Notes under the pieces: generated by a model
What the model saw: the letters and a program-made list of their open reading frames with translations, nothing else
What the model was told of the DNA's origin: nothing
The model's database searches: none
Translations under genes and position numbers: made by a program
NCBI GenBank assembly: GCA_047495785.1
Contig: JBLDXI010000018.1
Location: 434,001-498,000 of the forward strand
Origin: Lepidodermella squamata
Lineage: Eukaryota > Animalia > Gastrotricha
DNA: 64,000 nucleotides
Reading direction: 5' to 3'
Shown: positions 4,200 through 44,817 of the stretch, piece after piece
How the letters are laid out: every line of letters begins with the position of its first letter
Position numbering within the stretch: position 1 is the first letter of the stretch

Positions 4200-4600
4200 A
4201 TGTAAGCCGACAGTTGGACTACAGGTAGCTTGATCGTCTGACGGCTTCCGCCCGCTCAGCCAGCTCTCGGCTTTTTCCAACTCGAGGTTTTGATTTCCCG
4301 CGCATTATTGCCAAAATATTAAAATATTATGTGCGCGGGCGCGAAATTCGACTGATTATTAAATGCCTGCACTAAAATGAAATTCTCATGTAAAAACAAG
4401 TGTGAAAATCAATCAGCTGTTAATAGTTTTTTTTCTCGGGTTTCTCTCTTTTTCATTCTATAGAAACCCGAGGAAAAGGTCCCCGAGGTCTGTCTGTCTT
4501 TATCCGTCGGTCCCAAATCGGTTGTAGTTCGTGGAGAAAGCTATGCGCGTCACTCATGGGGGTCCAACTAGTATGGTAGTAATTTGATCGGCTATATTTT
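4200..4600. promoter_or_regulatory. Putative bidirectional promoter (F-box/GATAD1 versus BRK1/METAP1D/KIN17) with E2F-like sites
   Basis: Divergent genes; TTTCCCGCGC (~4294) and GGCGCGAAA (~4338). Confidence 0.5.
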
Positions 4601-4852
4601 GGATTCAGAAATTATGGAAGGCCTCAAACAAGCGCGAATTCCGCGCCTGGCGATTGTACTGGGTGCTTGTTCAGCTTTCAGCTCGAAAACGCTGTTTTGC
4701 ATGCCAAAAGTAGCAAAGCTGTTTATAACTGCCTATTTTTTCTCGAACACCCTGTATTTTCGTGATTTCCCTTCAGCATGCAGGGAGAATAGAGATTTTA
4801 ATTTCTTCTTTCGACGTCACCTCGATAAAACTTTTGGGGTTAAGCCAACAGT

Positions 4853-4920
4853 AAACAGAAACAGAACTATAATTAGAATCAGAACTAATTATAATTAGAA
4901 ACAGAACTAATTATAAGTAA
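4853..4920. repeat. Short minisatellite (cagaacta(at)tataattagaa units)
   Basis: About three imperfect tandem copies visible. Confidence 0.7.
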
Positions 4921-5024
4921 CAGTCAGAATGGTCTCTTACTCATACTTGTACTGCGGGACACCTTCAGAAAGATTTTCTGAACCATCTTTTTATTTAATT
5001 TGATCTTTGATCCTTTATCTTTAG

Positions 5025-5371
5025 ATGTCTAATAGCCCTTCTACTTCTGGAAGCTCTGCCTTTCCTTTCGTTCAAAAAGAGATCTCGAGCGATTGGAACA
5101 ACCGTGAATTTATCCAAGTCATTTCTGCCAACATCAAAAAGATTTCTGACGCCCTGAACGCATTTGGTAGGTATCCTCTCTAAGCTTACTCAAATACATA
5201 GCTCTCTGCATGCATGGAAATGTCGAAGCGAAACCGTAATATGATTGATTTTTACTTTCAGACTTTACTTGTCGATCTCGGTTAGCTGAGCTTCACGAAC
5301 AACTGCAATCTTTACAGAATCGTGTCGAATACCTGGAAGCAAAAGCTACGAAAGCAGAAGGCGCAGAATAG
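5025..5371 (+). CDS. BRK1: BRICK1/HSPC300, WAVE/SCAR complex subunit; exons 5025-5166, 5262-5371 (83 aa); absent from the ORF track
   Basis: Spliced translation [83 protein letters not shown] matches the BRK1 DWxNRE...IKKI...FDxxCRSRLA...EYLEA pattern. Confidence 0.95.
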
Positions 5372-5379
5372 CCGAAACA

Positions 5380-6333
5380 ATGTCGCCTAGATTCAGCTCG
5401 TCTATTACTCTTATTAATAAATTTACTCCTCGCTTAACTGCTTCCGCTAATCATTTCCCCGCTCCGCCTTCATCGTCGCAGCCGATTCCACCAGATATCC
5501 CTCGCCCGCCTTACGCTTGCAACCCGCCGATTCCTCCACCTAAACTGCCGTCGATCCAGCTGAGAAAGGATGCTGATTATATTAAGAAAATGCGAAAAGC
5601 CGGCGAAATTGCCGCGCTAATTCTCGATGCATTAGGTCGAGCTGTTACGCCAGGCGTCTCGACTGCTGACCTGGATGATTTCGCCGTGGGCCACTGCAAA
5701 AAATACAAGTGCTACCCATCGCCGCTGGGCTATCGCGGCTTCCCCCGCTCAATTTGTACGTCAGTAAACGAAGTTGTGTGCCACGGCATTCCAAACGCCA
5801 ACGTGCTAAGTGATGGCGATATTATCACGATTGATGTTACAATTTTCCACGATGGGGTTCATGCAGATTGCGCTGCGACGTTCCCTGTCGGTTTCGGGAT
5901 GTCGGCTGAAGCGTTGAATTTGATGGACGCAGCTAGAACCGCTTCAGCATGTGCTGCTGCGACCTGTGTGAAAGACGCGACTCTAGGCGATATCGCCAGA
6001 ATGTGTGACCAAGTCGCTGAGAAATTCGGCTGCATCGTCCTGCCGAGTGTTTGCGGCCATGGGGTCGGGTTGAATTTCCATGAACCACCTACGATTGCTC
6101 ATTCGATGAAAATGCTGTCTTACAACAAGCAATTGGCGAATTTACGCCTCCAGCCTGGAATGACGTTGACTATTGAACCGGCTCTGGCGCTTTCAGGCTG
6201 CTCTGGCGAGGTGGTCATTGACCCGCGTGATGGTTGGACTGTTCGAACGGCGGATGGCAAGATTAGCGCGCAGTTTGAGCACACGTTGTTGGTCACGGAT
6301 CGCGGGCCGCAGATTATTACAGCGCTTCCATAA
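5380..6333 (+). CDS. METAP1D: Methionine aminopeptidase 1D, mitochondrial type (intronless, 317 aa)
   Basis: YPSPLGYRGFPRSICTSVNEVVCHGIP, DITIDVT..HAD, GHGVG..FHEPP, TIEP, SAQFEHT; no N-terminal zinc finger, Arg/Ser-rich presequence-like N-terminus. Confidence 0.9.
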   Translation: MSPRFSSSITLINKFTPRLTASANHFPAPPSSSQPIPPDIPRPPYACNPPIPPPKLPSIQLRKDADYIKKMRKAGEIAALILDALGRAVTPGVSTADLDDFAVGHCKKYKCYPSPLGYRGFPRSICTSVNEVVCHGIPNANVLSDGDIITIDVTIFHDGVHADCAATFPVGFGMSAEALNLMDAARTASACAAATCVKDATLGDIARMCDQVAEKFGCIVLPSVCGHGVGLNFHEPPTIAHSMKMLSYNKQLANLRLQPGMTLTIEPALALSGCSGEVVIDPRDGWTVRTADGKISAQFEHTLLVTDRGPQIITALP

Positions 6334-6497
6334 AAGAAAATGAGAATTTTCAATAAAATTTATTGTATAAGTTCGCTTTTCAAATTCTTGTAAATCAGTT
6401 TGAACACGCCTTACCTATATTTCATGTATCCTGAACATTATCCTAAAATCCATTCATTTTTTCTTAGATTTTTATTGTCATTTTCAAACGCTGAAAA

Positions 6498-8194
6498 ATG
6501 GACAAGAAAGATCCTTTTGGACCAAAGGCGATTGCCAAGCGCATGAAATCGAAAGGCCTGCAAAAACTGCGCTGGTACTGTCAAATGTGCGAGAAACAAT
6601 GTCGAGGTTTGTTCTATTTTTCTCATAAAACAAATGCAGCAAGAAATTGAAATGAAATTATTATCGATTTGCATTTCGAAAGTCTAATTTCTTCGAAATT
6701 TTCATTATCGCCGAAATGATTGTTCACCTCTTGTAGAATAGGAATGGAGGATATCCTAGTGTTAGTAAGCTGGCTGGGGTGTATTCCTTTTCAAATTTCC
6801 TAAAGATTCTTCGTCATCTGGGATTTCGAAGACTTTGGGAATCATAGTACAAGACTTAACCAGTTATTTCACGATCAATTTATTCACGCTTTGAAATTTG
6901 GCTGAACTGGCTTTTTTAATATCGAATCATTGTGCTCATTTTTAGATGAAAACGGCTTCAAGTGCCACATCATGTCCGAGGGCCACCAGCGGCAACTGCT
7001 GTTGTTCGGCCAGCGGCCCGGCAAGTACATGGACGAGTTTTCTCGCGAATTCAAAACGTGTTACCTGGATTTGCTGCGGCGGCGGTTCGGCGGGCGGCGT
7101 GTTCACTCGAATGTCGTGTACCAGGAGTACATCAAGGACAAGGAGCACATTCACATGAACTCGACGAAATGGGTCACCCTCACTGGCTTCGTGCAATATC
7201 TCGGCCGTGAAGGCTATTGCAAGGTTTGCAAACACTGCATTCAATATTTTGATTTTTTCAAAGTTTATCCAAGAAAAAATCTCGATGAAAAATACCGAAA
7301 GTTCGAAATGATCATATTCTCTGAATATTTTTCTAGGTCGAAGAAACGGAAAAAGGTTGGTTCATTCAGTACATCGAACGCGACGCCAAAGCGATGCAAA
7401 AAGCTATGGCGATGCAGAACAAGGACAAAATAGCGATGGACGACGAGGATCGCATCATCCACGACATAAACAAGCAGATCAAACGCGCGACTGAGGGCGC
7501 GTCGAGTTCTGCCCAGAAGGAAGAACCGCGCGCCACGGAGCTGATACGCGACCCGGACAACGAGGCGCCGATCAAGCTGAACCTCAGTCTCGTGAAACCG
7601 GTTGTTAAAGAGGAACCAGGCGTGCCTAGCACGTTCGCGAAACCACAGAATATCTTCGCCAAATTGAAGCAGGAGAAACAGGAGAAATTTTCCGATACAG
7701 CCTCAGTTGCTAGCTCGTCGTTTTCGACGGCTACTAAACGCTCGGCTTTGGATGAAATTCGCGAGGAAGAAGAGCGGTTGAAGGAGAAAAAGCACAGGCG
7801 GAATAATTGGCTACACGAGGGCATTGTCGTAAGACTGATCGGCAAAAGTTTGCCTCGAGAGGTTCAAGATCGCAAGGCTGTTATCCGGCGCCTAGTCGAT
7901 AAATTCACCGCAAAAGTTGAGTTGTTGCAAACGCAGAATTCGTCCAGTGATAAGTACGCTCAGGAGAAATTGCCGTCGGTAATCGACCAGGCGGACATGG
8001 AGACGGTCGTTCCGGCTCAGGGCCGACGGGTTCTCGTGGTGAATGGCGCGTATCGAGGCGCGACGGCCGTGGTCAAGAGCATCGATACGAACAGGTGTTT
8101 GCTGACGGTGGAAATCGACGCTGGGCCGTTGCGTGGTCGGCAGCTCGAGAATGTCGTGTTCGAGGACGTGTGTAAAATAGCCGACGAAAGATAA
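6498..8194 (+). CDS. KIN: DNA/RNA-binding protein KIN17; exons 6498-6606, 6946-7223, 7337-8194 (414 aa)
   Basis: KSKGLQKLRWYCQMCEKQCRDENGFKCH, HIHMNSTKWVTLTGFV, C-terminal SH3-like tandem; frame-consistent introns. Confidence 0.95.
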
Positions 8195-9874: not shown

Positions 9875-12800
9875 CTAATTTTGTTTAACAGCCGCTGCTG
9901 CTGCTGCAGTTGCAGGGGTGCTGCAGTTGGCGATGATGGCCGGTGATGGCAGGGCGGCGGAGGCGGCGAGCACGGAGCGGTCCAGCTCGTAGACGACCTC
10001 GGCGAGGGTCTGCTGGACCTGGCGGTCGAGCACGCGCGACATGGACAGGTGCAGGAGGCGGTCGTCGAAGCGGCGGAAGCGCGCCCGATTCTCGTCGATG
10101 CGCGCCATCGCGAGCAGAATCAGCGCCGCGCGGTTCAGAATGTCCACCGAGATGTTGAGCGCGTCGTAGTTGGCGGATGACATCGACGACCACGCCATCG
10201 GGTTCGAGTTGAACGCCTGCAAAAAACACATTGATTAATCGATTTGAAACATTTTTCCAACATCTAGTCTAGTTCATCTGGTTTATCCGGTCAATCCCAG
10301 GATCCCGCCAATTCAATATACAAAAAAATGAAAATAATGCCATCATTTACTGACAATTCAAGCGTTCCCGGCTCCAAGTTTTAGGGTTCCAATGCTCCTT
10401 TTTTCGATGTTTTTCTTTTTCTTTACGGTCTCAAATTAAAAAGTTGAATTGAAAAATTGCTGAGCTAACAAATTGTTGGTCTTTTCCCATAAAAGATTCT
10501 GTCGAATAAAAAAGTGCTAGGTCGAATAATAAAGACTTACATGAGCGCACTGCTGCTCGGACTGTTCGAGGAAGGAGACGAGCAGAACGACGGCCATGGG
10601 GTTGAGGGCGAGGCAGCGCGCGACGCCGGCGTCCGCCTGGCTCAGCGCTGCCAGGAACACGACGACGAGTTCGCGCAGCACCTGGTCCGGCGCCGACGCC
10701 AGGCAGCCGAGGGCCGTCCACAGCGCCGCGACCAGTTGCGGCAGTGGTGGGCCGGCGATCAGGTGGTCGACGTTGCCGGGCCGCACCGTCAACTTGCACA
10801 GGGTCTCGAGCGCGAGGCGCTGCGGCGTCAGCATCGGGTCGTGCTGGTCCGGAAACGGGTCCGCCGCCTCCGCCGTCTCGCCCGTCAGCCACGCCAGCAA
10901 GTTGAGGCACAGCGGCCGTGCGATCTCGTCCGGCATCGCGCCCAGTTCGAACTCGCCCGCCACGTTCGTCAGCACCACCAGCACGTTCTCGTGCAAAGTT
11001 CCTATTCAAAACATAACACGACAAGATTATTCACAGTGGATAAGTGGACACTTGCAGCAATCAACAATTTAGGTTGACTTTCTCAAAAAGAAAAACAAGT
11101 GTAGTTAAAGCAGCTCGTTTACTAACCTAGTACTGGCAGCCACCAAGCCGAGTTGCAGGGCGCGAGGGGCTCGCAGCCGGGCGTCGACTCGCTGCCGTCC
11201 GGGCCGTCGTAGACCACGGCGCCGCCTGCATCCGCGTCGTTGCCGTCGTTGCTTCGATGAGTGTCGCCGCGTACGGCGTCTGACGCGACAAAGGGCTTGC
11301 GTGGCGACACGCCATCGTGGCGGCGCAGTGCCAGCAGGCGGTTGAAGATGTGCAGGAGGGGCCAGCAGCGGGCCATGACCGCGTCGTTGCCGGGGATCGA
11401 CGACAAGCTGCGCAGGATGTTCGACAGCACGACGCACCGCTCGGCGACGAGCCGCTCCGCCTCGACCGACGCCGCGTCGCCCGGCGCCAGCAGGTGCGCC
11501 CGCGGCAGGAACGACGGCCCGGGCAGCGCCGCGGCGACACTCGCGCGGATGGCCGACGCAATCGCCGACGTCAGGTCAGGCTCGATTTCTGGCATGGCAG
11601 ACGCCGCAGTCGCAGCAGCAGGGCTCGTTGCCTCGTTGCCATTCGTCGTCGTCGTCGCTTCTGTCGCTTTTTCTTCTTCAGCTGGTTGTTGCTGTGGTAG
11701 TTCTGCGGGTTCGACAACTTCCTCCTTAGTGGTAGCAAGCGCTGGTGAAGAAGCGGCGTGGCCGTTTTGAACAACCGATTTCGTCGCTGGCATCAACAAC
11801 CCATCGGCGATGTCGCCGCCATTCTGATGATTGCCATGGTGATGGTGGTTGTGATGGTGGCCGTTCAGCTTCGGCGTCGACGCCCGGCTGTTGTTGCCGT
11901 TCATTTTCGGCAGGTCGAGTTTCAACGCCGGCGATGCTTGCTGTTGCTGTTGCGGCTGAGTCACTGTCGTCGCAGCTGCTGCTGCTGCTGCAGGCGTAGT
12001 CGGCTTTGTCGAGTTCAACGACATGCGAGACTCGGCGGCGGCGTGGTGGCGACTGACGGCGTTCAACAACAACAACTTGGCGCGTTTCGCGTGTCTCGAT
12101 TTCACCGCCTTTTTCAACGCTTTCCGCCTGAACAGCGCCGAGCGATACGGCGCCGTCAGGTAGAACGCTGTCAAGGGGCAGCCGGCCGTGCCCAGCTTCA
12201 ACTGCTTCGCCGACGGCACGCTCGCCAGTTTCAGCACGTCGCAGTCGCGGTCGAGCGACTGCAGATTCGCCTCAACCTCGTCGCAGTTCTGGCTTTTCGA
12301 CGACAACGGCTGCCGCTGCTGCAAGTGCGTCGCTTCTTTCAAATCCGCGGACAGCAACTGCAGCGACGACGGCGGCGGCGGCGGACTCGCGCTATGGCCG
12401 TTTTGCTGCTGCTGCTGATGTTGATGTTGATGTTCTGGCTCGATTTTAACAGCCACGCCACGCCGCGTTCGCCACGTGTAGTTTTTGCGCTTCGGTCCGT
12501 TCAGCACGACGGTGCGGTCGTCGGGCCGCAAGTCGGCCGCCTTCGCCCGCAGCAGCATCAGCAACGCATGCGAGCCGCCCTTCACCTTGCCGTTCGACCC
12601 GCCGCCGTGCAGCCCATTGCCACCGCCGCCTAGCTTCTCTGCGATCTTCTCCATCAACTCGTCGGCAGCATCTTGAGCAACTCCTCGTGCCCTCATGCCC
12701 GTTGTTGTTGTTGTTGTTGTTGCTATCGACAGTGGGGATGCGGACAGCGACGTTGATGCAGACGTCGACAATGACGACGAAGACGTTACTAAAGTCTTGT

Positions 12801-15800
12801 CTAGTTGATGTTGCTGCTGATGTTGTAGCAAATCGGCGAGTGGCTCGCACATGAGCGACAGGGACGAGCGGAAAATGTCGGCGAGCATGTCGAGGAGGGA
12901 GGGCCAGCACGAGAGCGTGAAGAAGCCGGCGGCGTGGTCGTCGGCGAGCAGCACGTTCAGCACGTCGAGCGCCCAGTTCTGGTCGGCGACGAGCGACGTC
13001 TTCAGCGACATGACCACGCGCCACGGGTCGACGGGGCCGAGGTCGCGCGCCGTCATCTTGCGCCGCTTCACCGCCACCGGGCCCGCCGCCTCGACGCTCG
13101 ACGCCGGGAACAGCGGCGGAGCTTGCGGCTGTGGCGGCGGCGGGGCGATCGCCATTGCGGCGTGGTGCGCCATCATGCCCGTAGGACCACTCGAGCCAGG
13201 ACCGCCGCCGACTAGTTGGCTCAGCTGGTTGATATGCTGGTACGAGTTGACCGCCGATGACGGCGGCATCGACGGCGGGCCTTGCAGCAGCGAGTTGAGC
13301 TGACTCGCACCCGCTGACATGGGCGCCGGCGTCGACGGGGTCGAACCGCCGCCGCCGCCACTCGCCATCTGCTGCAGTTGCTGCTGTTGTTGTTGCTGTT
13401 CGCGCTTTTTCGCAGTCGCTGATTTGGCGGGTTTGCGCGGCGGCGTGTTCGTCGTCATCGGCGACTCGTGCTGCGACATCGAGTCGTTGTTCAGCGACAG
13501 CGCTGCGTTGTTGCTGTTAGCATTGTTATTCGCATTGCTATTGTTGTTATTGTTCGACGACGCCGAAATCGACGTCGGCAGCTGCAGGCCGGCGATGAAC
13601 GACGCCGAGTCGTTGAGGTCCATCGGCGTCGAGTCCGGGTTCTTCTTCTTGCCGCGCCGCGACTTGGCAGGCGGCGGCGGTGGCGACGAGCCGGGCGGTT
13701 TCGACGCCGAGCCAGGCGCCGCTTGTTGCTGCTGCTGCTGCTGTTGTTGTTGGTGGTAAATGTCTGCGCCGGGGGCGACGTGGCCCGGTCTCGCTGGCAT
13801 AAACATCGGGTTCGTCTGCGACTGCATCGGGCCACTGCCGACCGGTGGCGGGTACGGCTGGCCCGCCGAGTTCGGGTCCCCCGACGACGGGTATGGCGCA
13901 CCGTACGGCGGCCTCGCACCTCCAGGCATCATGCCCGGCTGTTGAGGCCCCTGCTGGCCAGGATACCCACCCGGTTGCTGTTGCTGCTGCTGCTGCATCA
14001 TGCCTAGATATGAAAAAAAGCAACGTTCAAGAAATGTCTTCAGAACAGCAAATGCAATAAGTATCTCCCACCCTCGCGATATAAAAAGTAACGAAAGCTA
14101 ACCTGGATACATGCCAGGATAAGGACCCGGTGGCCGAGGTGGCTGGCCGGGCATCGTTGGCGCCGGAGACATGTAACCATCCGGGCCATTCGCCAACGGT
14201 TGGTTGTTCGCCGCCGCCGCCGCATTCGGATCCATCATTCCAGGCGGTGCTTGTTGCTGCTGCTGCGGGCCTGGGTAGCCCGGGTAGCCTTGCGGCGGCA
14301 TGCCAGGCGCCATTTGAGCCTGTTGCTGCTGGTGGTGCATGGCGTAGCGTTGCTGTTGCTGAGTCATATCCGGCGCCTGGTAGCCAGGCTGGCCGGGTTG
14401 CTGCTGCTGCTGAGCTGGCATGTAAATGGGCCGTCCCATTTGGTCGTAGCCCATCATCTGCTGCTGCTGCTGCTGTGGTGGCTGGCCAGGGTACACGCCC
14501 GGCGGTTGTTGGCCAGGGTAGCCACTGCCAGGCTGCCCGCCGAAACCAGGTCGCGGTGGCGTTGGATAGCCGCCAGGTTGGCCCGGGTATTGCCCAGGCT
14601 GAGGCTGGCCGTACGGAGCTCCCTGTTGCGGACCTCCGTACGGGTACTGAGGACCACCGCCCATTCCACCAGGCTGCCCAGGGTAGCCTGTCTGACCCGG
14701 GTACATCATGGGCGGTTGCGGCGGCGGCGGTGGCTGCTGCTGCTGCTGGCCGAAGAGATTAGGCGTCGGCTCGGCTTTAGGTCGCGACATGGCATTATTG
14801 CCGCCAGTCATCGACATGTCATTATTATTGGTGCTGTTCAGGTCGGTGACACTGCTGCCGAGCTTCGACTTTTCCGCCTTGGTCTCCTTGCGCCGCTTCT
14901 CCTTCTTGGCCGCGTTCTGGAACTGGCGTTCCGCCTCGGCGACGCCCGCCCTCGGGTCGGCGTGCCCGCGGTCGAAGTGCAGCTCGTACGCCAGCAGGCA
15001 CTTGATGTAGTGCCGCCGCAGCGTGTAGCCCGTCGACGCCGACGTGTTCGCAATGGCGACCTGCGCAATCTCCTTCCACTTCTTCTCGTTGTTCACCTCC
15101 CAGAAGCCGCCGCGCTCCTTCACCGTCACGTACAACCGCCACAGATCAAGCAGTTGCTTGCAGCAGTGCGGCACGAACAGAAAAATCTTCAGCTCGTTCG
15201 TGTAGTACGCCTGCACCGCGTCGAGGAACTGCCGACGGTCTGGCTCGTCGCCAAAATCGTACAGCTTCTCCCACGGCTCGACGGGCTGCGCGAGCGGCGG
15301 CATCATGCACGGCGTGAGGCCGGGCGGGCACGGCGGCGACGGGTACACCGGCTTCTCCTTCTCCTCGAACGTCATCGACGACTGCTTCTTCGGCTTCTTG
15401 CTGCCGCCGCCACCGCCCCCGCCGCCGCCCGTCGATGACACGGGGCCGAAATCGCCGGAGAATTTCGACGACGAAGTCGGCGACAACGGCCCATCCGCCG
15501 ATTCGTCGATGCACGACGCGGGCGAGGCGACCGACGACGGCGACAACGGCGCCGCCAAGCTCGGTAAACTCGGCCGGCGTATCGAGTCGTCTTGCTGGTC
15601 CTGCCCCGCCTGTCCCGCCAAGTGGTCCATCGACGACGAGAGCGATGACGACTGCGACAACGGTCCGCCACCGCCGCCGCCGTACTGCTGACGGTTGACG
15701 GTGGGTTGTTGGTTGTTAAACGGCTGTTGCGAGTTAAATTGGCCTGGCGGCTGTGATCGGCTGTTCGGCGGACTCGGAAAGTCAGCCGACGAGGTTTGTG

Positions 15801-17992
15801 AAAGCGCTGCATGTTGTTGCTCGGCGGCAAGAGATTCCTTCTAAATAAGAAAGTAATGAGAAAACTGTGTTCAAATAATGCTGCTTTTTTTCGTTACCAT
15901 GTCAGACGAATGTTGTTGCGAGGAGGGGAAAGGCATTTGCTGCTGGCCATAGAAACCGCCAGGCTGAGTTGAAAGACTGTTGGGTGGTGGTTGTTGTTGG
16001 CCAAACGGCGGCCGCGGCTGGCCCTGTTGCTGCTGGCCCGGCGTTTGCGGCCGAGGAGGCAATCCGCCGACTGCTTGCTGTTGTTGCTGGCCCGGCGGCG
16101 CCATCATGCCGGGTTGACTAGACGGACCCGACGGTTGGTTCGATAGCTGTAAATAAAATTACAAAGCAACATATTAAAAAAGCAATCCAACTTTAGAGGC
16201 AAAAGCAGTTAAAGAGTTAGTAAAACCGAGAAACACCAACACCACCGCCATCACCACTGTTGCTTCTCAAAATGAGCCAAGTTGAGATTTTTGAAAATGC
16301 GCGACCCTTCCGCCTGATGCAATAAAAAAGTGCGCCTGCTAATTAAATAGTGTGCAGTTTAGCAGTTTTGTTGGGTTGTTTTCATAAGAAAAAGCGTCAC
16401 GATGTTTCAATCAGCCTCCTGCTAACCTCGAGCGTTGCAACGACATCGTCGTCGCAGCTCAACTCAGCCGCTAAAATGCTGGTCGTCGGCGTCGAGATCG
16501 GCACATCCTTTAATGTTATTATCATATTGGAATTTGGACAATAATTTTGAATGTTGCTCTTCAAAAGGCTGCTAAAATGAAATCGGAGAAAAACGGCGAA
16601 AACTTACAGGGAAAGACGATTGCTGTTGTTGTGGCGGCTGGTTGGGCCGTGGACCGCCGGCAGCTGACGGGTACGGTGAGCCGACGTTGGGCGACTGCGG
16701 CAACTGCTGCGGAGGTAGCATCGGCTGGCGAGGTTGCTGCCCGGGCTGGCCAGGCCGCTGGTAGTACGGGTCGTCGTAGCGAGGCTGGCCGTAGCCGTAA
16801 CCCGGCTGTGACGGGTACCGCTGCTGCCCATAGTACTGCTGCTGCTGCTGTTGTTGTTGCTGTTGTTGTTGCTGCTGCTGATGCATCATGTACTGTTGCT
16901 GCTGCTGCATGTACGCCGCATTGCCGTACTGCTGCTGCTGCGATGATGGATCTGCTGCCGAGGTGGGGCCGTTCGGTATCGAACCGGAGTCAGGCGACAT
17001 CATGCCGCCGTCCGGCCCTGTCGCCGACGTCGACGACGGGTCTTTCGAGGGGTCGTTCGGCTGCTGGGCGCCGTACGGTTGGCCGCCATAGCCGCCATAG
17101 CCAGGTGGTTGGCCGTACGGTTGAGGCTGCTGTTGTTGTTGAGGAGGAGGAGGAGCAGGAGGGTAGCCGTAGGGTGGTCGTTGTTGCTGCTGCTGCTGCG
17201 CGTACGCCTGTTGCTGGCCGTACATTTGCTGCTGAGAATAAGGCCCGTTCGAAGCCGGGTAACGAGGTTGTTGTTGCTGCTGCTGGCCGTAGCCAGTCGC
17301 CTGCTGTTGACCAGGATAGCCCTGTTGCTGGGCGCCGTAGCCTTGCGGCATGTAGCCCTGCGGAGGACCTTGCTGCTGAGGGTACCCGCCAGGATAGCCA
17401 GGCGGGACTCCACCACCGCCAGGCGCCATCATTCGATGCGGGTCGTAACCGCCCTAAAATATAACAATTTATTAAAATAATATTAAATCGTTATGCTAAA
17501 ATTTGAGTGAAAGGTTCAATGAAATGCATTAGCTTCAAGTCCCATTTTTCAGTTTAATGCCTCAATTGCGTCAAAATTGACGTAACAACTAAAGCAGACA
17601 GGCGGGCGAATTTTGAAAAACTAAAATAAGGGCAAAATCAATTTTCGCCAATTCTAGTACGCCGTCATTCCTCCGTAGCAACAAACAAAACTGAAACTAG
17701 AATTTACCATTTGTTGAGGCGGATACTGGCCGTAACCGCCAGGCTGTGGCCCTCTCGGTGGCTGGACTCCGCCGGCGGGTGAAGGCGATTGCAGCAGTTG
17801 ATTTAACACAGGTAATTGTCCCTGTTGCTGCTGGTTGGGCGTCGCTTTTCCCGACGGCTGCGTCGCGTACTGAGCGTAGCCCATCGCCTGCTGGTGGTAA
17901 TAATCACCGTTCGGTCCTCCACCGCCACCGCCACCACCGCCGCCTCCATTCATTCCACTGTGGTCTTGCTGCTGCTGTTGCTGCTGATCCAT
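9875..17992 (-). CDS. ARID1: ARID1A/B (osa, BAF250) SWI/SNF subunit; exons 17992-17708, 17453-16608, 16146-15898, 15840-14103, 14003-11127, 11001-10541, 10216-9875 (~2265 aa)
   Basis: ARID domain (LDLWRLYVTVKERGG...KKWKEIA...TLRRHYIKCLLAYE), DPWRVVMSLK..WALDVLNVLL, RCVVLSNILRSLS, PQRLALETLCKL (BAF250_C); exon total 6798 nt is divisible by 3. Confidence 0.93.
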
Positions 17993-20900
17993 TCAGTTTT
18001 TTTACAAGTTGTCGAAATCAACAGTCAGATAACACGTAGCATAGTATCGCAGTCGTCGTTCATCCGAAACTTTCTTCGTCTTTATCAATAAAAACGGTCG
18101 CCAAAAATAGCAACTGGTAGTGAAGTCAGTAATGATAATAAGAAACGTAAATCAGCACGCGTTTCAAACAGCTCAAAGGCTGCACTTCAGTTCTTCTATA
18201 TAAATTTTTTAAAATTATCTATAAAACGATAGACGAATAAAAATATGTCTGGGCAGCCAAAACGGGTTATAGATGATAACACAAGTTCGCATTTCAGCCA
18301 AAAGCGCGGACGCACTATCAATAAAACGCGTGTTCTCGTTAATTACTTTGCCGATTCTGCGGCGCATTTTTGCTGCTCCTATCGATGACTCTGACATGTA
18401 TCTACGTACAGGCGGATGGTGCAAAAACTTTTTTCCTCGTTTTCATCATCGGTCAACAAAACACGTGCCACGAATTGGTGGTGCGTGTGTGTGTTGCAAG
18501 TCGTCGCGTGTCCAGCAAAACGCAGCCAAAACAAGATGACGCCTTCGTGTAGTATTACGCCGCACCGCAACGACAACAAATAAAATAAAACGTTAACACC
18601 ACATGGCTCTACAATGTAAAAAAGACAGTCCCTAAAACTTGAAAAAAATCGACGTCGACAAAAAGATGCGATTTTCTCGCAAAAATCGGCAGCAAAAGTC
18701 GACATGTGATGAGTGGCCGTTTTTTGGGCCGGGTCGGCCCCGTGCCAAAAAGAGAGGGGCTCAACCACGTGGTGGCGTGGTGGTGGTTGGTGGTGGACCG
18801 CGGCGGCGGGTATATTTCTATACAATGCTTGTATAATAATAATAACACATCATCATCATCGCAATAGTCATAATAATAGGCGAGTACGCTGACGAGCAGC
18901 ACTATCGCGCAGCAAAAGCCAGCCAGCAACGCAGTAAAGGCCAGCGAGGAGTTTATAAAGCAACTGAAACACTCCGCCACCGCCGTCGCCGCCGTCGGAG
19001 AAAATTTTTCCCGCTTACTCTCTCTCTCTCGCGCGCGCCTCTCTCCGCCGTTCGCCGTTCGCAAGCAAGCGCAAATACTGCGCATACACATCACATACAC
19101 AAGTAAAGCATGCATGAAGCATGCAGATTTCGCCCTGCCTGCCTGCATATGTTCCATAGTCACCCTATAACTGTGCTTGCGTACTGTGTGATATATTATG
19201 GGATTTTTAACAACAAATAGAAACACGCCGTAACGCATGAAGCCCGAATGCGCCGCGACGGAGTTCGGCACACGCTCGATCCTTCTTAAATTTGCAGCCG
19301 CAGCCGCTAGCCAGCTATTGGCGCATCGGAAAATCTTGCAAAAAATTGCAAATCGTGTAGATTCGCTCCAATATTTAGCTGTAAAATTTCTAAAAAATTA
19401 GCAAATTTGGCTGCGACAGCAAAAATCGCCAAAGTTTGACGTTCGCTTAAAAACGCGCGTTTTCAGTTGTTGTGTGCGCACAAATAACAGCCTATTATGA
19501 AAGACGAGGCATGTGCAGTATGCGCCCCGACGGCAGTACTACACAGCGTAATGCCAGCGATCGGCCTTCCAAATAGAATAACATATTGCCTGCGTGTTGT
19601 GCTGCTCGCTCTCGCTGCTTTCGTCTCGTCGTGTGCTTACAGGGATGAATCGATAGCACACACACACACATAAAAGCTTGCTCTCACTCACTCGTTGCTG
19701 CACACACACACACATACACATAAAATACGAACTACGCGCGCGAATTATTATTATTTGTACTGTGCTGCTCGGTCAAGCTGCCGCTACGTGTGCCTACAGC
19801 ACATGCATATTCTACGAGCGAGCGACGGCGGCTGAGTGATGATTATTATGACGGAATATAACGAACCAACGCGAGCGAGCGAGCGAACGAGCGAGGCAGA
19901 GGCAGAGGCAGAGAGAGAGAGAGAGAGAACGGCGCTGTATGATGCATGGATGAAAAGGAAATAGACGAAAATGCTGCGCGGCGGCGGCGGCGGCTGCAGC
20001 AGCAACAACAGCCTGTCAGAGAGTAGTATAGTGCTGAGGCTGGCGCGTAGGCAAGCAGTAAGTAATCCAATGCCGTTATTTCATATAGCAGACGGGTGAC
20101 ACACAGCACATGTTAAGGGAAAAGCGGAGAGAAGAAGACCTTCGCCGCGATAACGCAGCAGTAATGATGCTGCAGATAATAATAGTAATAACAGCGCGAA
20201 TGAAGATAGCTAATAGCAATAATAGTAAAATTCGTGCCGACAAAAGTTATGTTTATCTGTTGACGAGCAAAAAAACCTGTACCGTACTAAATGCGAGGAA
20301 ATAAGCAGGACAGTATCCGCTGAAAGTAGCACTGAGTAAACATCGGCAAAATATAAAACGTACTTTATACTACTACCAGTTTCCCCAAGAAACCGCAGAG
20401 CAAACGAAAGAATCTTAGTCCCACAGGTCACGTACTAATCTGTTGTAACTGCGCCATTACTCATCGTTCAGTCACTTTTCATATTTTTCAGCCTTGAATC
20501 ATATCAAGTCATGGCACGAAAAGACAAATTCATATTTACCTGTCATAAAAAAGAAAACAAATCTCACCTTGAAAATTATACTCATTTTTATTCAAGCTGC
20601 ATTTATCGCAGATATTTAGCAGTGTTTTTTGGCTCTTATTTGCATCATCGTTGTCCTGGTTTTTTTCATATTATTATTTGCTTTTCAATCTCTCAGTCTT
20701 CAGAACAGGATTTTCCCCTTAATGAGTACGATACAATATGCGGAATATAAAATAGAAAAAAACAGACGGTCACTTTGAATACTGAGTAGTACCAGATAAT
20801 ACTACCTGTCGCTTTTTTGCGCTATCAGCCGCACGGCTACTATAAATGAGCGCTCACACGCGCTTTTTTGTTTTGCGGTCACGCCGGTAAAATAAATAAT

Positions 20901-38448: not shown

Positions 38449-44817
<6,369 letters not shown>

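What the first reader, a model, noticed from the sequence alone, without database searches (positions are those of the whole stretch)
5025..6333. BRK1-METAP1D: probable true bicistronic mRNA with an AUG-free upstream cistron
Seen: the BRK1 stop (TAG 5369-5371) is followed by only 8 nt (ccgaaaca) before the METAP1D ATG (5380). The two frames differ, so this is not a readthrough fusion. The gap has no poly(A) signal, pyrimidine tract or promoter, and the first downstream AATAAA I see is at 6352, after METAP1D. The 252-nt spliced BRK1 CDS has no ATG in any frame after its start, whereas its 95-nt intron has four. The Met usually seen in BRK1 'FDMSCRSRL' is here 'FDFTCRSRL'. The METAP1D AUG has A at -3, and the BRK1 AUG sits directly on a splice acceptor (tttag|ATG), so its leader may be very short. 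Inference: one mature mRNA makes a WAVE-complex subunit and a mitochondrial aminopeptidase by leaky scanning or reinitiation, which is rare in animals.
Basis: partly seen in the sequence, partly recalled or inferred. Interest (0 to 1): 0.85.

Follow-up and report, generated by a model that had tools for sequence, protein, structure and literature searches.

The report
Conserved two-gene BRK1–MetAP messenger RNA
In this spliced-leader trans-splicing animal, public RNA assemblies show the small actin regulator gene BRK1 and a methionine aminopeptidase gene on one spliced, leader-capped, polyadenylated mRNA with only 8 bases between them. Two distant relatives keep the same tight junction, so this looks like a real, conserved bicistronic mRNA, which is unusual for an animal.

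Summary
The anatomy holds. BRK1 (5025-5166 + 5262-5371, stop TAG) ends 8 nt before the ATG of a type I methionine aminopeptidase (5380-6333), in another frame. It is not conserved and shows no sign of use.

- **RNA evidence:** in two independent RNA runs, contigs carry a non-genomic leader joined at the AG|ATG acceptor, spliced BRK1, the intact 8-nt spacer and MetAP. A poly(A) tail follows at about 6370. No leader or poly(A) branch appears at the junction, and the junction contig has the same depth as the MetAP body.
- **The leader is a true spliced leader:** its 19-mer, followed by GTATGT, sits beside 5S rRNA in rDNA spacers of two metagenome contigs.
- **Conservation:** two relatives with saturated synonymous sites keep the junction, with a 17-nt spacer in one and a UAAUG stop/start overlap in the other. 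BRK1–MetAP–KIN17 order is conserved in the relative whose contig reaches that far.
- **ATG depletion:** modest (about p = 0.03) and broken in one relative.

My reading is a true bicistronic mRNA, with MetAP made by termination-reinitiation and/or leaky scanning. Translation itself is untested. First readers noted similar unchecked pairs elsewhere in this genome (POP7–THUMPD2, DPM3–LIPT2, POLR1D–CIAO1). The organism was not identified.

The parts
5023..5024 (+). Trans-splice acceptor AG. The spliced leader is joined so that the mRNA reads ...GUGUCUAAG|AUG, and the genomic 5' UTR has zero length.
   Evidence: loose ends at 5023: X2 AATTTGATTTGTGTCTA, X1 ATTTGTGTCTA. The leader is absent from the 64-kb window.
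5025..5166 (+). BRK1 (BRICK1/HSPC300) exon 1, 142 nt.
   Evidence: RNA joint.
5167..5261 (+). BRK1 intron, 95 nt, GT..AG, with four ATGs. It is removed in the RNA.
   Evidence: joint 5165->5261, 'skips 95', in X1 (depth 158.5) and X2. The unspliced form has depth about 4 in X1.
5262..5371 (+). BRK1 exon 2 with stop TAG at 5369-5371.
5372..5379 (+). 8-nt inter-ORF spacer CCGAAACA, present unchanged in the RNA contigs.
   Evidence: X2 record 9 (5261-5873) and X1 record 2 (5261-5567) cross it without gaps.
5380..6333 (+). Type I methionine aminopeptidase (METAP1D-like), 317 aa, a single exon. Its N-terminal extension MSPRF... is conserved in the relatives.
   Evidence: By eye, the alignment shows the HGIP, D, D, GHG, E and E catalytic positions.
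5416..5421 (+). AATAAA inside the MetAP coding sequence (codons I-N-K).
6352..6357 (+). Poly(A) signal AATAAA of the bicistronic mRNA.
6368..6370 (+). Poly(A) addition site.
   Evidence: loose end of 22 A behind 6370 in X1.
6371..6467 (+). Region between the poly(A) site and the conserved acceptor TCTTAG|ATTTTTA (AG at 6466-6467) of the next gene. There is no steady-state RNA here.
   Evidence: depth 0 in X1 and X2 for 6409-6519. Searches show the same acceptor motif in L002.
6498..8194 (+). KIN17 gene, the downstream neighbour, with exons 6498-6606, 6946-7223 and 7337-8194. Its position after MetAP is conserved in L002.
   Evidence: (joints).

Best explanation
BRK1 and the MetAP gene are expressed as one mature bicistronic mRNA: spliced leader (at least 19 nt, no AUG in that part) fused directly to the BRK1 AUG, then spliced BRK1 (83 codons), the 8-nt spacer, MetAP (317 codons), a 37-nt 3' UTR and poly(A).

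Unlike the next junction (MetAP to KIN17), which is processed by polyadenylation and probably trans-splicing, the BRK1/MetAP junction is not processed. MetAP is therefore translated from an internal AUG. The likely routes are 40S subunits that stay on the mRNA after terminating the short BRK1 ORF (termination-reinitiation), ribosomes that leak past the BRK1 AUG and meet no other AUG, or both.

Shown: the RNA structure at contig level, the spliced-leader identity, the conservation of the junction, and purifying selection on both ORFs. Inferred: that MetAP protein comes from this mRNA, and by which route.
For: RNA structure:
- X2 contig record 9 (773 nt) is a 17-nt non-genomic leader + 5023-5165 + 5261-5873. 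X1 record 1 carries the leader, exon 1 and the exon junction. X1 record 2 (5261-5567) crosses the spacer.
- X1 mean depths are 312.5 for the junction contig against 313.8 and 300.9 for contigs inside MetAP, so the two parts are about equimolar.
- Poly(A) lies at 6370. No loose end appears at 5372-5380 or after AATAAA 5416.
- Silent DNA (4300-4632, 6409-6519, the KIN17 intron) has depth 0 in X1, so X1 is RNA and not DNA.

Spliced leader:
- The leader is absent from the window.
- Its 19-mer is followed by GTATGT in L008 and L015, which share the flanks ATCTGCG...GTATGTAT.
- Both copies lie in LSU-5S-SL(-SSU) rDNA spacers.

Conservation:
- L005/L001 (BRK1 89%, MetAP about 78% identical) have a 17-nt spacer.
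- L002 (about 61% MetAP identity) has GAG-UAAUG, with stop and start overlapping, and the same BRK1-MetAP-KIN17 order.
- Synonymous sites are saturated and BRK1 dN/dS is about 0.03.

Other points:
- The MetAP frame is closed just upstream of its AUG in both relatives, so there is no frameshift fusion.
- Out-of-frame ATGs in BRK1 number 0, 0 and 1 against about 1.5, 2.0 and 2.5 expected. Control genes give 54 observed against 61 expected.
- The acceptor context upstream of the MetAP AUG in the window is purine-rich.
- The junction RNA is unstructured, z = +2.2.
Against: - All RNA evidence is from assembled contigs, which drop rare variants and can in principle join overlapping transcripts. No single-molecule read was available.
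- An AG lies within 8 nt upstream of the MetAP AUG in all three species, so a minor trans-spliced monocistronic MetAP mRNA is not excluded.
- Reinitiation after an 83-codon ORF is usually inefficient in eukaryotes (my own knowledge, not tested here).
- No calicivirus-type UGGGA motif or conserved 18S complementarity was found.
- The BRK1 AUG has A at -3, which does not favour leaky scanning.
- One relative has an internal out-of-frame AUG.
- There are no ribosome profiling or peptide data.
Confidence: 0.6

Rival explanations
1. Alternative trans-splicing. The bicistronic mRNA serves only BRK1, with MetAP as a long 3' UTR. MetAP protein comes instead from a less abundant monocistronic mRNA, made by trans-splicing the leader to the AG just upstream of the MetAP AUG: TAG|CC in the window, ATAG|AA in L005, GAG|TA in L002.
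For: - The organism trans-splices.
- An AG lies 2-8 nt upstream of the AUG in all three species.
- Contigs drop minor variants, and short leader tips may be clipped by the assembler.
- This reading avoids the problem of reinitiation after 83 codons.
Against: - No leader-MetAP junction contig or loose end appears in either RNA run, at depth of about 300 in X1.
- The junction contig and the MetAP-body contigs have equal depth.
- The sequence upstream of the AG is purine-rich in the window.
- Such trans-splicing would destroy the BRK1 message of that precursor.
- It does not explain why the stop/start distance is held at -1 to 17 nt, or why ATGs are depleted.
Confidence: 0.25
2. Two overlapping monocistronic mRNAs. 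BRK1 would be polyadenylated after AATAAA 5416, and MetAP would have its own 5' end inside or just after BRK1. The assembler would then have merged them into one contig.
For: AATAAA at 5416. The read-laying tool warns that a contig across two genes does not prove a single transcript.
Against: - No poly(A) or leader loose end occurs between 5261 and 5567, although such ends were kept at 5023 and 6370.
- If both forms were abundant, the graph would branch and break the contig, as it did at the intron boundary for an unspliced form at about 1-3% depth.
- The hexamer is not conserved: it reads ATCAACAAG in L005.
Confidence: 0.05
3. The contigs represent nuclear polycistronic precursor, not mature cytoplasmic mRNA.
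For: Operon precursors exist in trans-splicing animals. Total-RNA or SMART libraries can contain them.
Against: - The molecule is leader-capped, intron-spliced and polyadenylated.
- It has full depth, not the roughly 1-3% seen for the unspliced intron.
- The true inter-gene region at 6409-6519 has depth 0.
Confidence: 0.05

Closest known systems
Polycistronic mRNAs of green algae (Gallaher et al. 2021, PMC7896298)
   Same: Small upstream ORF, short inter-ORF spacer, ORFs out of frame, and no IRES needed. That paper discusses both leaky scanning and post-termination reinitiation. Changing the upstream Kozak-like sequence shifted the ratio of the two products.
   Different: Here the host is an animal, and the mRNA carries a trans-spliced leader fused directly to the first AUG. 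The spacer is -1 to 17 nt. The pair sits next to a junction that looks like an ordinary operon junction. No translation data exist.
Operons resolved by spliced-leader trans-splicing in nematodes, tunicates, flatworms and rotifers, including junctions with little or no intercistronic spacer (own knowledge)
   Same: The organism trans-splices, genes are co-oriented and tightly packed, and gene order is conserved. The MetAP to KIN17 junction shows poly(A) followed about 96 nt later by a conserved acceptor.
   Different: At BRK1/MetAP there is no 3' end formation and no leader addition, and the upstream stop is 8 nt (or -1 nt) from the downstream AUG. The mature RNA stays bicistronic.
Termination-reinitiation with UAAUG or AUGA overlaps (influenza B M1/BM2, calicivirus VP1/VP2; own knowledge)
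   Same: Stop and start overlap or lie within a few nt: UAAUG in L002, 8 and 17 nt in the other two.
   Different: No UGGGA (TURBS motif 1) and no conserved complementarity to 18S rRNA. This is a cellular gene pair.
Animal dicistronic genes such as Drosophila stoned and Adh/Adhr or mammalian SNURF-SNRPN and MOCS2 (own knowledge)
   Same: Two unrelated proteins from one capped, polyadenylated mRNA, with a short first ORF.
   Different: Those are in organisms without spliced-leader operons, and their spacers are usually longer or the ORFs overlap extensively. The BRK1-MetAP pairing turned up in no paper of the library searched.

Membership tests
True bicistronic eukaryotic mRNA | Both complete ORFs lie on one processed (capped or leader-bearing, spliced, polyadenylated) RNA | tested here: met
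   leader + spliced BRK1 + spacer + MetAP in one X2 contig, overlapping X1 contigs, and poly(A) at 6370. This is contig-level evidence, not single-molecule evidence.
True bicistronic eukaryotic mRNA | No RNA processing (cleavage/polyadenylation, trans-splicing, own TSS) between the ORFs | tested here: inconclusive
   One search shows no loose ends or contig breaks at 5261-5567, and depth equal to the MetAP body. However, contigs cannot exclude a minor processed form.
True bicistronic eukaryotic mRNA | Both ORFs are translated from that mRNA | not testable with these tools
   Only indirect evidence: both ORFs are under purifying selection, the MetAP start MSPRF is conserved, and the catalytic residues are present.
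Leaky-scanning bicistron | No AUG between the first and second start codons, and a weak or cap-proximal first AUG | tested here: inconclusive
   There are 0 internal ATGs in the window and in L005, and 1 in L002. Depletion has p of about 0.03. The first AUG has A at -3 after a leader of at least 19 nt, possibly about 26 nt by the shared flanks, so it is not obviously weak.
Termination-reinitiation bicistron | Stop and restart codons overlap or lie within a few nucleotides | tested here: met
   Spacers of 8, 17 and -1 nt (UAAUG) in three species with saturated synonymous divergence.
Termination-reinitiation bicistron (viral TURBS type) | Upstream UGGGA-type motif complementary to 18S rRNA helix 26 | tested here: not met
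   no TGGGA in any of the three BRK1 coding sequences, and no conserved 18S complementarity.
Operon junction resolved by spliced-leader trans-splicing | The organism has SL RNA genes and SL-bearing mRNAs | tested here: met
   The leader is on BRK1 in two runs. SL exon + GTATGT lies next to 5S rRNA in rDNA spacers of related metagenome contigs.
Operon junction resolved by spliced-leader trans-splicing | The downstream cistron receives the leader, and the upstream cistron is polyadenylated between the two | tested here: not met
   neither was seen at BRK1/MetAP. The spacer is 8 nt with no poly(A) signal upstream of it.
BRICK1/HSPC300 | Sequence homology over the coiled-coil core | tested here: met
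   Human BRICK1 3p8c_E, E = 1.4e-22 over residues 16-80. 438 family hits.
METAP1D (mitochondrial type I MetAP) | Type I MetAP catalytic domain without the METAP1 zinc-finger N-terminus, with an N-terminal presequence and a mitochondrial location | tested here: inconclusive
   The M24 domain and metal ligands are present. Human METAP1D 8khm scores 1.8e-54, but actinobacterial type Ic enzymes score better (about 1e-65). Targeting was not tested, and orthology was not resolved by a tree.

The most novel reading that the evidence does not exclude
This lineage may hold a whole class of 'collapsed' operon junctions. Where a small-protein gene lies upstream (BRK1 here; POP7, DPM3 and POLR1D in unchecked first-reader notes on other pieces of this genome), intercistronic processing would have been lost. 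The downstream gene would then be expressed by prokaryote-like translational coupling (stop/start overlap or a spacer of a few nt) on a spliced-leader mRNA, and the arrangement kept over deep evolutionary time.
Probability: 0.35. Interest if true: 0.8.

Novelty: new variant of a known kind. Interest (0 to 1): 0.6.

Why it matters
Animals are thought to resolve operons into monocistronic mRNAs by trans-splicing, and true bicistronic mRNAs are scattered exceptions. This case differs in four ways:
- An unresolved junction sits next to what looks like a normally processed one (poly(A) at 6370, a conserved acceptor, no RNA between), possibly within one gene cluster.
- It is conserved across three species whose synonymous sites are saturated.
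- Its stop/start geometry runs from UAAUG to 17 nt, typical of translational coupling.
- It occurs in a natural cellular mRNA.

That gives a tractable system for asking how animal ribosomes reach a second cistron after an 83-codon ORF on a leader-bearing mRNA. It also bears on whether operon junctions can evolve into coupled cistrons. For annotation, such pairs will be mis-modelled as fusions or as separate genes with missing UTRs.

Tried and rejected
- **Cis 5' exon instead of a spliced leader:** rejected. The 17-mer is absent from the window even with 3 mismatches. The single 11-mer match at 42060 is at chance level and lies just inside an intron-like GT, with no SL-gene features.
- **Frameshift or readthrough fusion:** rejected. 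The frames differ, and the MetAP frame is closed 1-7 codons upstream of its AUG in the relatives. The shared offset of the spacers (8, 17 and -1 are all 2 mod 3) is probably chance, about 1 in 9.
- **Splicing that removes the stop:** rejected. The only joint in the pair is the 95-nt intron.
- **TURBS or 18S pairing:** none conserved.
- **Conserved RNA structure at the junction:** none. The window region is less structured than shuffles. The L002 fold included intron sequence and should be ignored.
- **Loss of Met in FDMSCRSRL as a signal:** rejected as uninformative.
- **Rfam scan of the window:** no hits.
- **Literature search for the leader sequence and for a BRK1/METAP1D pairing:** nothing found.
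- **Identifying the organism:** failed. The best named KIN17 hits are only 33-43% identical (flies, nematodes, a barnacle, a leech), the protein atlas was uninformative, and no rRNA reference tool was available.
- **Scan of the window for other tight stop/start pairs:** only noise.
- **More relatives:** one further candidate (P0273, a Logan contig with a gene starting about where BRK1 should end) had no DNA available. L017 is a different lineage without the arrangement.

Full report
**Observation.** The sequence is as described.
- BRK1 starts at 5025, directly after the acceptor ...ctttAG. It has a 95-nt GT..AG intron (5167-5261) and ends with TAG at 5369-5371.
- The spacer CCGAAACA follows, and a 317-codon ORF starts at 5380 in a different frame.
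- The spliced 252-nt BRK1 CDS has no ATG besides its start. The intron has four.
- The first ORF is BRICK1/HSPC300: human BRICK1 in PDB 3p8c scores E = 1.4e-22, with 438 family hits in the representative library.
- The second ORF is a type I methionine aminopeptidase (Pfam M24, 3e-45). By eye, the alignment shows the catalytic positions, and the protein has an N-terminal extension.
- Its best solved relatives are actinobacterial type Ic enzymes (about 1e-65), ahead of human METAP1D (1.8e-54). 'METAP1D' is therefore a reasonable but unproven orthology label.

**RNA evidence.** Only one read-laying run was allowed. Four runs were laid on 4300-7600; the fourth, X7, laid nothing.
- X1 and X2 are RNA. 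They skip the BRK1 and KIN17 introns, and X1 has zero depth over silent stretches.
- X3 is DNA, with even depth over introns and spacers.
- In both RNA runs the contig that starts BRK1 carries extra letters before 5023: AATTTGATTTGTGTCTA in X2 and ATTTGTGTCTA in X1. The acceptor AG is removed in splicing, so the mRNA reads ...GTGTCTAAG|ATG.
- X2 record 9 (773 nt) is one contig of leader + exon 1 + exon 2 + spacer + MetAP up to 5873. X1 record 2 (5261-5567) also crosses the spacer without gaps.
- A 22-A tail follows 6370, downstream of AATAAA 6352.
- No loose end or contig break occurs at 5372-5380 or after AATAAA 5416. By contrast, the X1 contigs do break at the intron boundary, where an unspliced form of only about 4x depth branches off.
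- X1 mean depths are 312.5 for the junction contig and 313.8 and 300.9 for contigs inside MetAP.
- A large population of MetAP mRNAs lacking BRK1 exon 2 would lower the first figure. If leader-MetAP junctions were the major form, the graph would branch at 5369-5372.
- I therefore take the bicistronic RNA to be the main species. A minor processed form cannot be excluded from contigs.

**The leader is a spliced leader.**
- It is absent from the 64-kb window.
- An exact scan of metagenome contigs for the 19-mer gave 11 loci. Nine are unrelated chance contexts.
- Two loci, L008 and L015, have ATCTGCG-AATTTGATTTGTGTCTAAG-GTATGTAT, which is an exon followed by a consensus 5' splice site.
- Both lie in rDNA spacers next to a 5S rRNA gene, between LSU and SSU in L008.
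- This is the classical 5S/SL-RNA linkage. It matches an unchecked first-reader note on this same genome (s1-374104).
- The part of the leader seen in the RNA contains no AUG, so the BRK1 AUG is the first on the mRNA, with A at -3.

**Conservation.** Homology searches found only two close relatives, both environmental.
- L005/L001 (JGI; BRK1 89% and MetAP about 78% identical) have TAA, a 17-nt spacer, then ATG. BRK1 is again ATG-free. BRK1 is intronless in that contig, and whether the contig is RNA or DNA is unknown.
- L002 (ENA; MetAP about 61% identical) has BRK1 with two short introns, the stop overlapping the start as GAG-UAAUG, one weak-context out-of-frame ATG at CDS position 40 opening a 22-codon ORF, and KIN17 directly downstream.
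- All three BRK1 genes have an acceptor AG abutting the ATG.
- Synonymous sites are saturated between all pairs (pS 0.69-0.88), while BRK1 dN/dS is about 0.03. The tight junction has thus been kept through extensive divergence.
- The MetAP frame is closed 1-7 codons upstream of its AUG in the relatives, which excludes a frameshift fusion.
- AATAAA 5416 is just the codons I-N-K and is not conserved.

**ATG depletion.** Given each protein sequence and local codon usage, BRK1 should carry about 1.5, 2.0 and 2.5 out-of-frame ATGs, and it has 0, 0 and 1. Control genes (MetAP, KIN17) show 54 observed against 61 expected. By my own Poisson estimate from those numbers, this gives roughly p = 0.03. The missing internal Met is not informative: the position is Met in only 80 of 149 family representatives, and 22% of them have no core Met.

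**Contrast with the next junction.** After the MetAP poly(A) site, RNA depth falls to zero (6409-6519). A conserved acceptor TCTTAG|ATTTTTA (AG at 6466-6467) precedes the KIN17 ATG by 30 nt, and the same motif precedes KIN17 in L002. This looks like an ordinary spliced-leader operon junction, although the leader on KIN17 was not captured. BRK1/MetAP is the exception: continuous RNA at full depth.

**Mechanism.** The conserved near-zero stop/start distance, down to UAAUG, is what termination-reinitiation requires. ATG depletion and the cap-proximal first AUG are what leaky scanning requires. The internal AUG in L002 and the A at -3 argue against pure leaky scanning. The 83-codon length and the lack of a TURBS-like element argue against efficient reinitiation. 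The junction RNA is unstructured in the window. I rate reinitiation somewhat more likely than leaky scanning, and both may contribute. The main rival is a minor trans-spliced MetAP mRNA using the AG 2-8 nt upstream of the AUG.

**Comparison and novelty.** Bicistronic mRNAs are known in green algae (PMC7896298), in some fungi, and as isolated animal cases (own knowledge). What is new here:
- the spliced-leader and apparent operon context;
- the conserved coupling geometry;
- the particular gene pair, which turned up in no paper of the library searched.

First readers noted three similar tight pairs with small upstream ORFs elsewhere in this genome. These are unchecked, but if real the phenomenon is a class rather than a single case. 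The organism was not identified. It is a bilaterian with no close relatives among named proteins.

Noticed in passing
L008:2400-2600 (- strand) and L015:720-810 (- strand): SL RNA genes (exon ...ATCTGCGAATTTGATTTGTGTCTAAG then GTATGT) lie in the rDNA intergenic spacer beside 5S rRNA. L008 carries several tandem, partly degenerate exon+donor copies upstream of the likely functional one. No paper in the library searched held this leader sequence.
   Followed up: partly
window 5380-6333; L002 830-1792: The MetAP cistron is intronless in both species, while its small neighbours are interrupted: BRK1 has 1-2 introns in 250 nt and KIN17 has at least 2. The lack of exon junctions downstream of the BRK1 stop would spare a bicistronic mRNA from EJC-dependent nonsense-mediated decay. 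This is an idea only.
   Followed up: no
window 4633-5003: Low-depth RNA contigs with 'opposite strands' joints and a DNA depth spike (406 against about 72 in X3 at 4633-4743) lie upstream of BRK1. Repeated 'cagaactaattataat' units occur at 4860-4920. This looks like a multi-copy inverted-repeat (MITE-like) element in the BRK1 upstream region.
   Followed up: no
window 10000-18000: A block of 54-64% G+C stands against about 45% elsewhere. It coincides with long minus-strand ORFs of an ARID1/BAF250-like gene (ARID and BAF250_C domains).
   Followed up: no
window 5380-6333: The MetAP is closer in sequence to actinobacterial type Ic MetAPs, including their N-terminal PxxP-rich extension, than to human METAP1D or METAP1. 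Orthology or an older bacterial origin was not resolved.
   Followed up: partly
window 5372-5379; L005 477-493; L002 829: The spacer lengths 8, 17 and -1 are all 2 mod 3 and differ by 9 nt steps, so the relative reading frame of the two cistrons is the same in all three species. No frameshift fusion is possible. The cause is unexplained and may be chance.
   Followed up: partly
L005:1-224: The relative's contig has BRK1 without its intron but keeps 224 nt of upstream sequence ending in an acceptor (ctatAG|ATG) instead of the leader. It is either genomic DNA with an intronless BRK1 or a partly processed precursor. The sample type is unknown.
   Followed up: no
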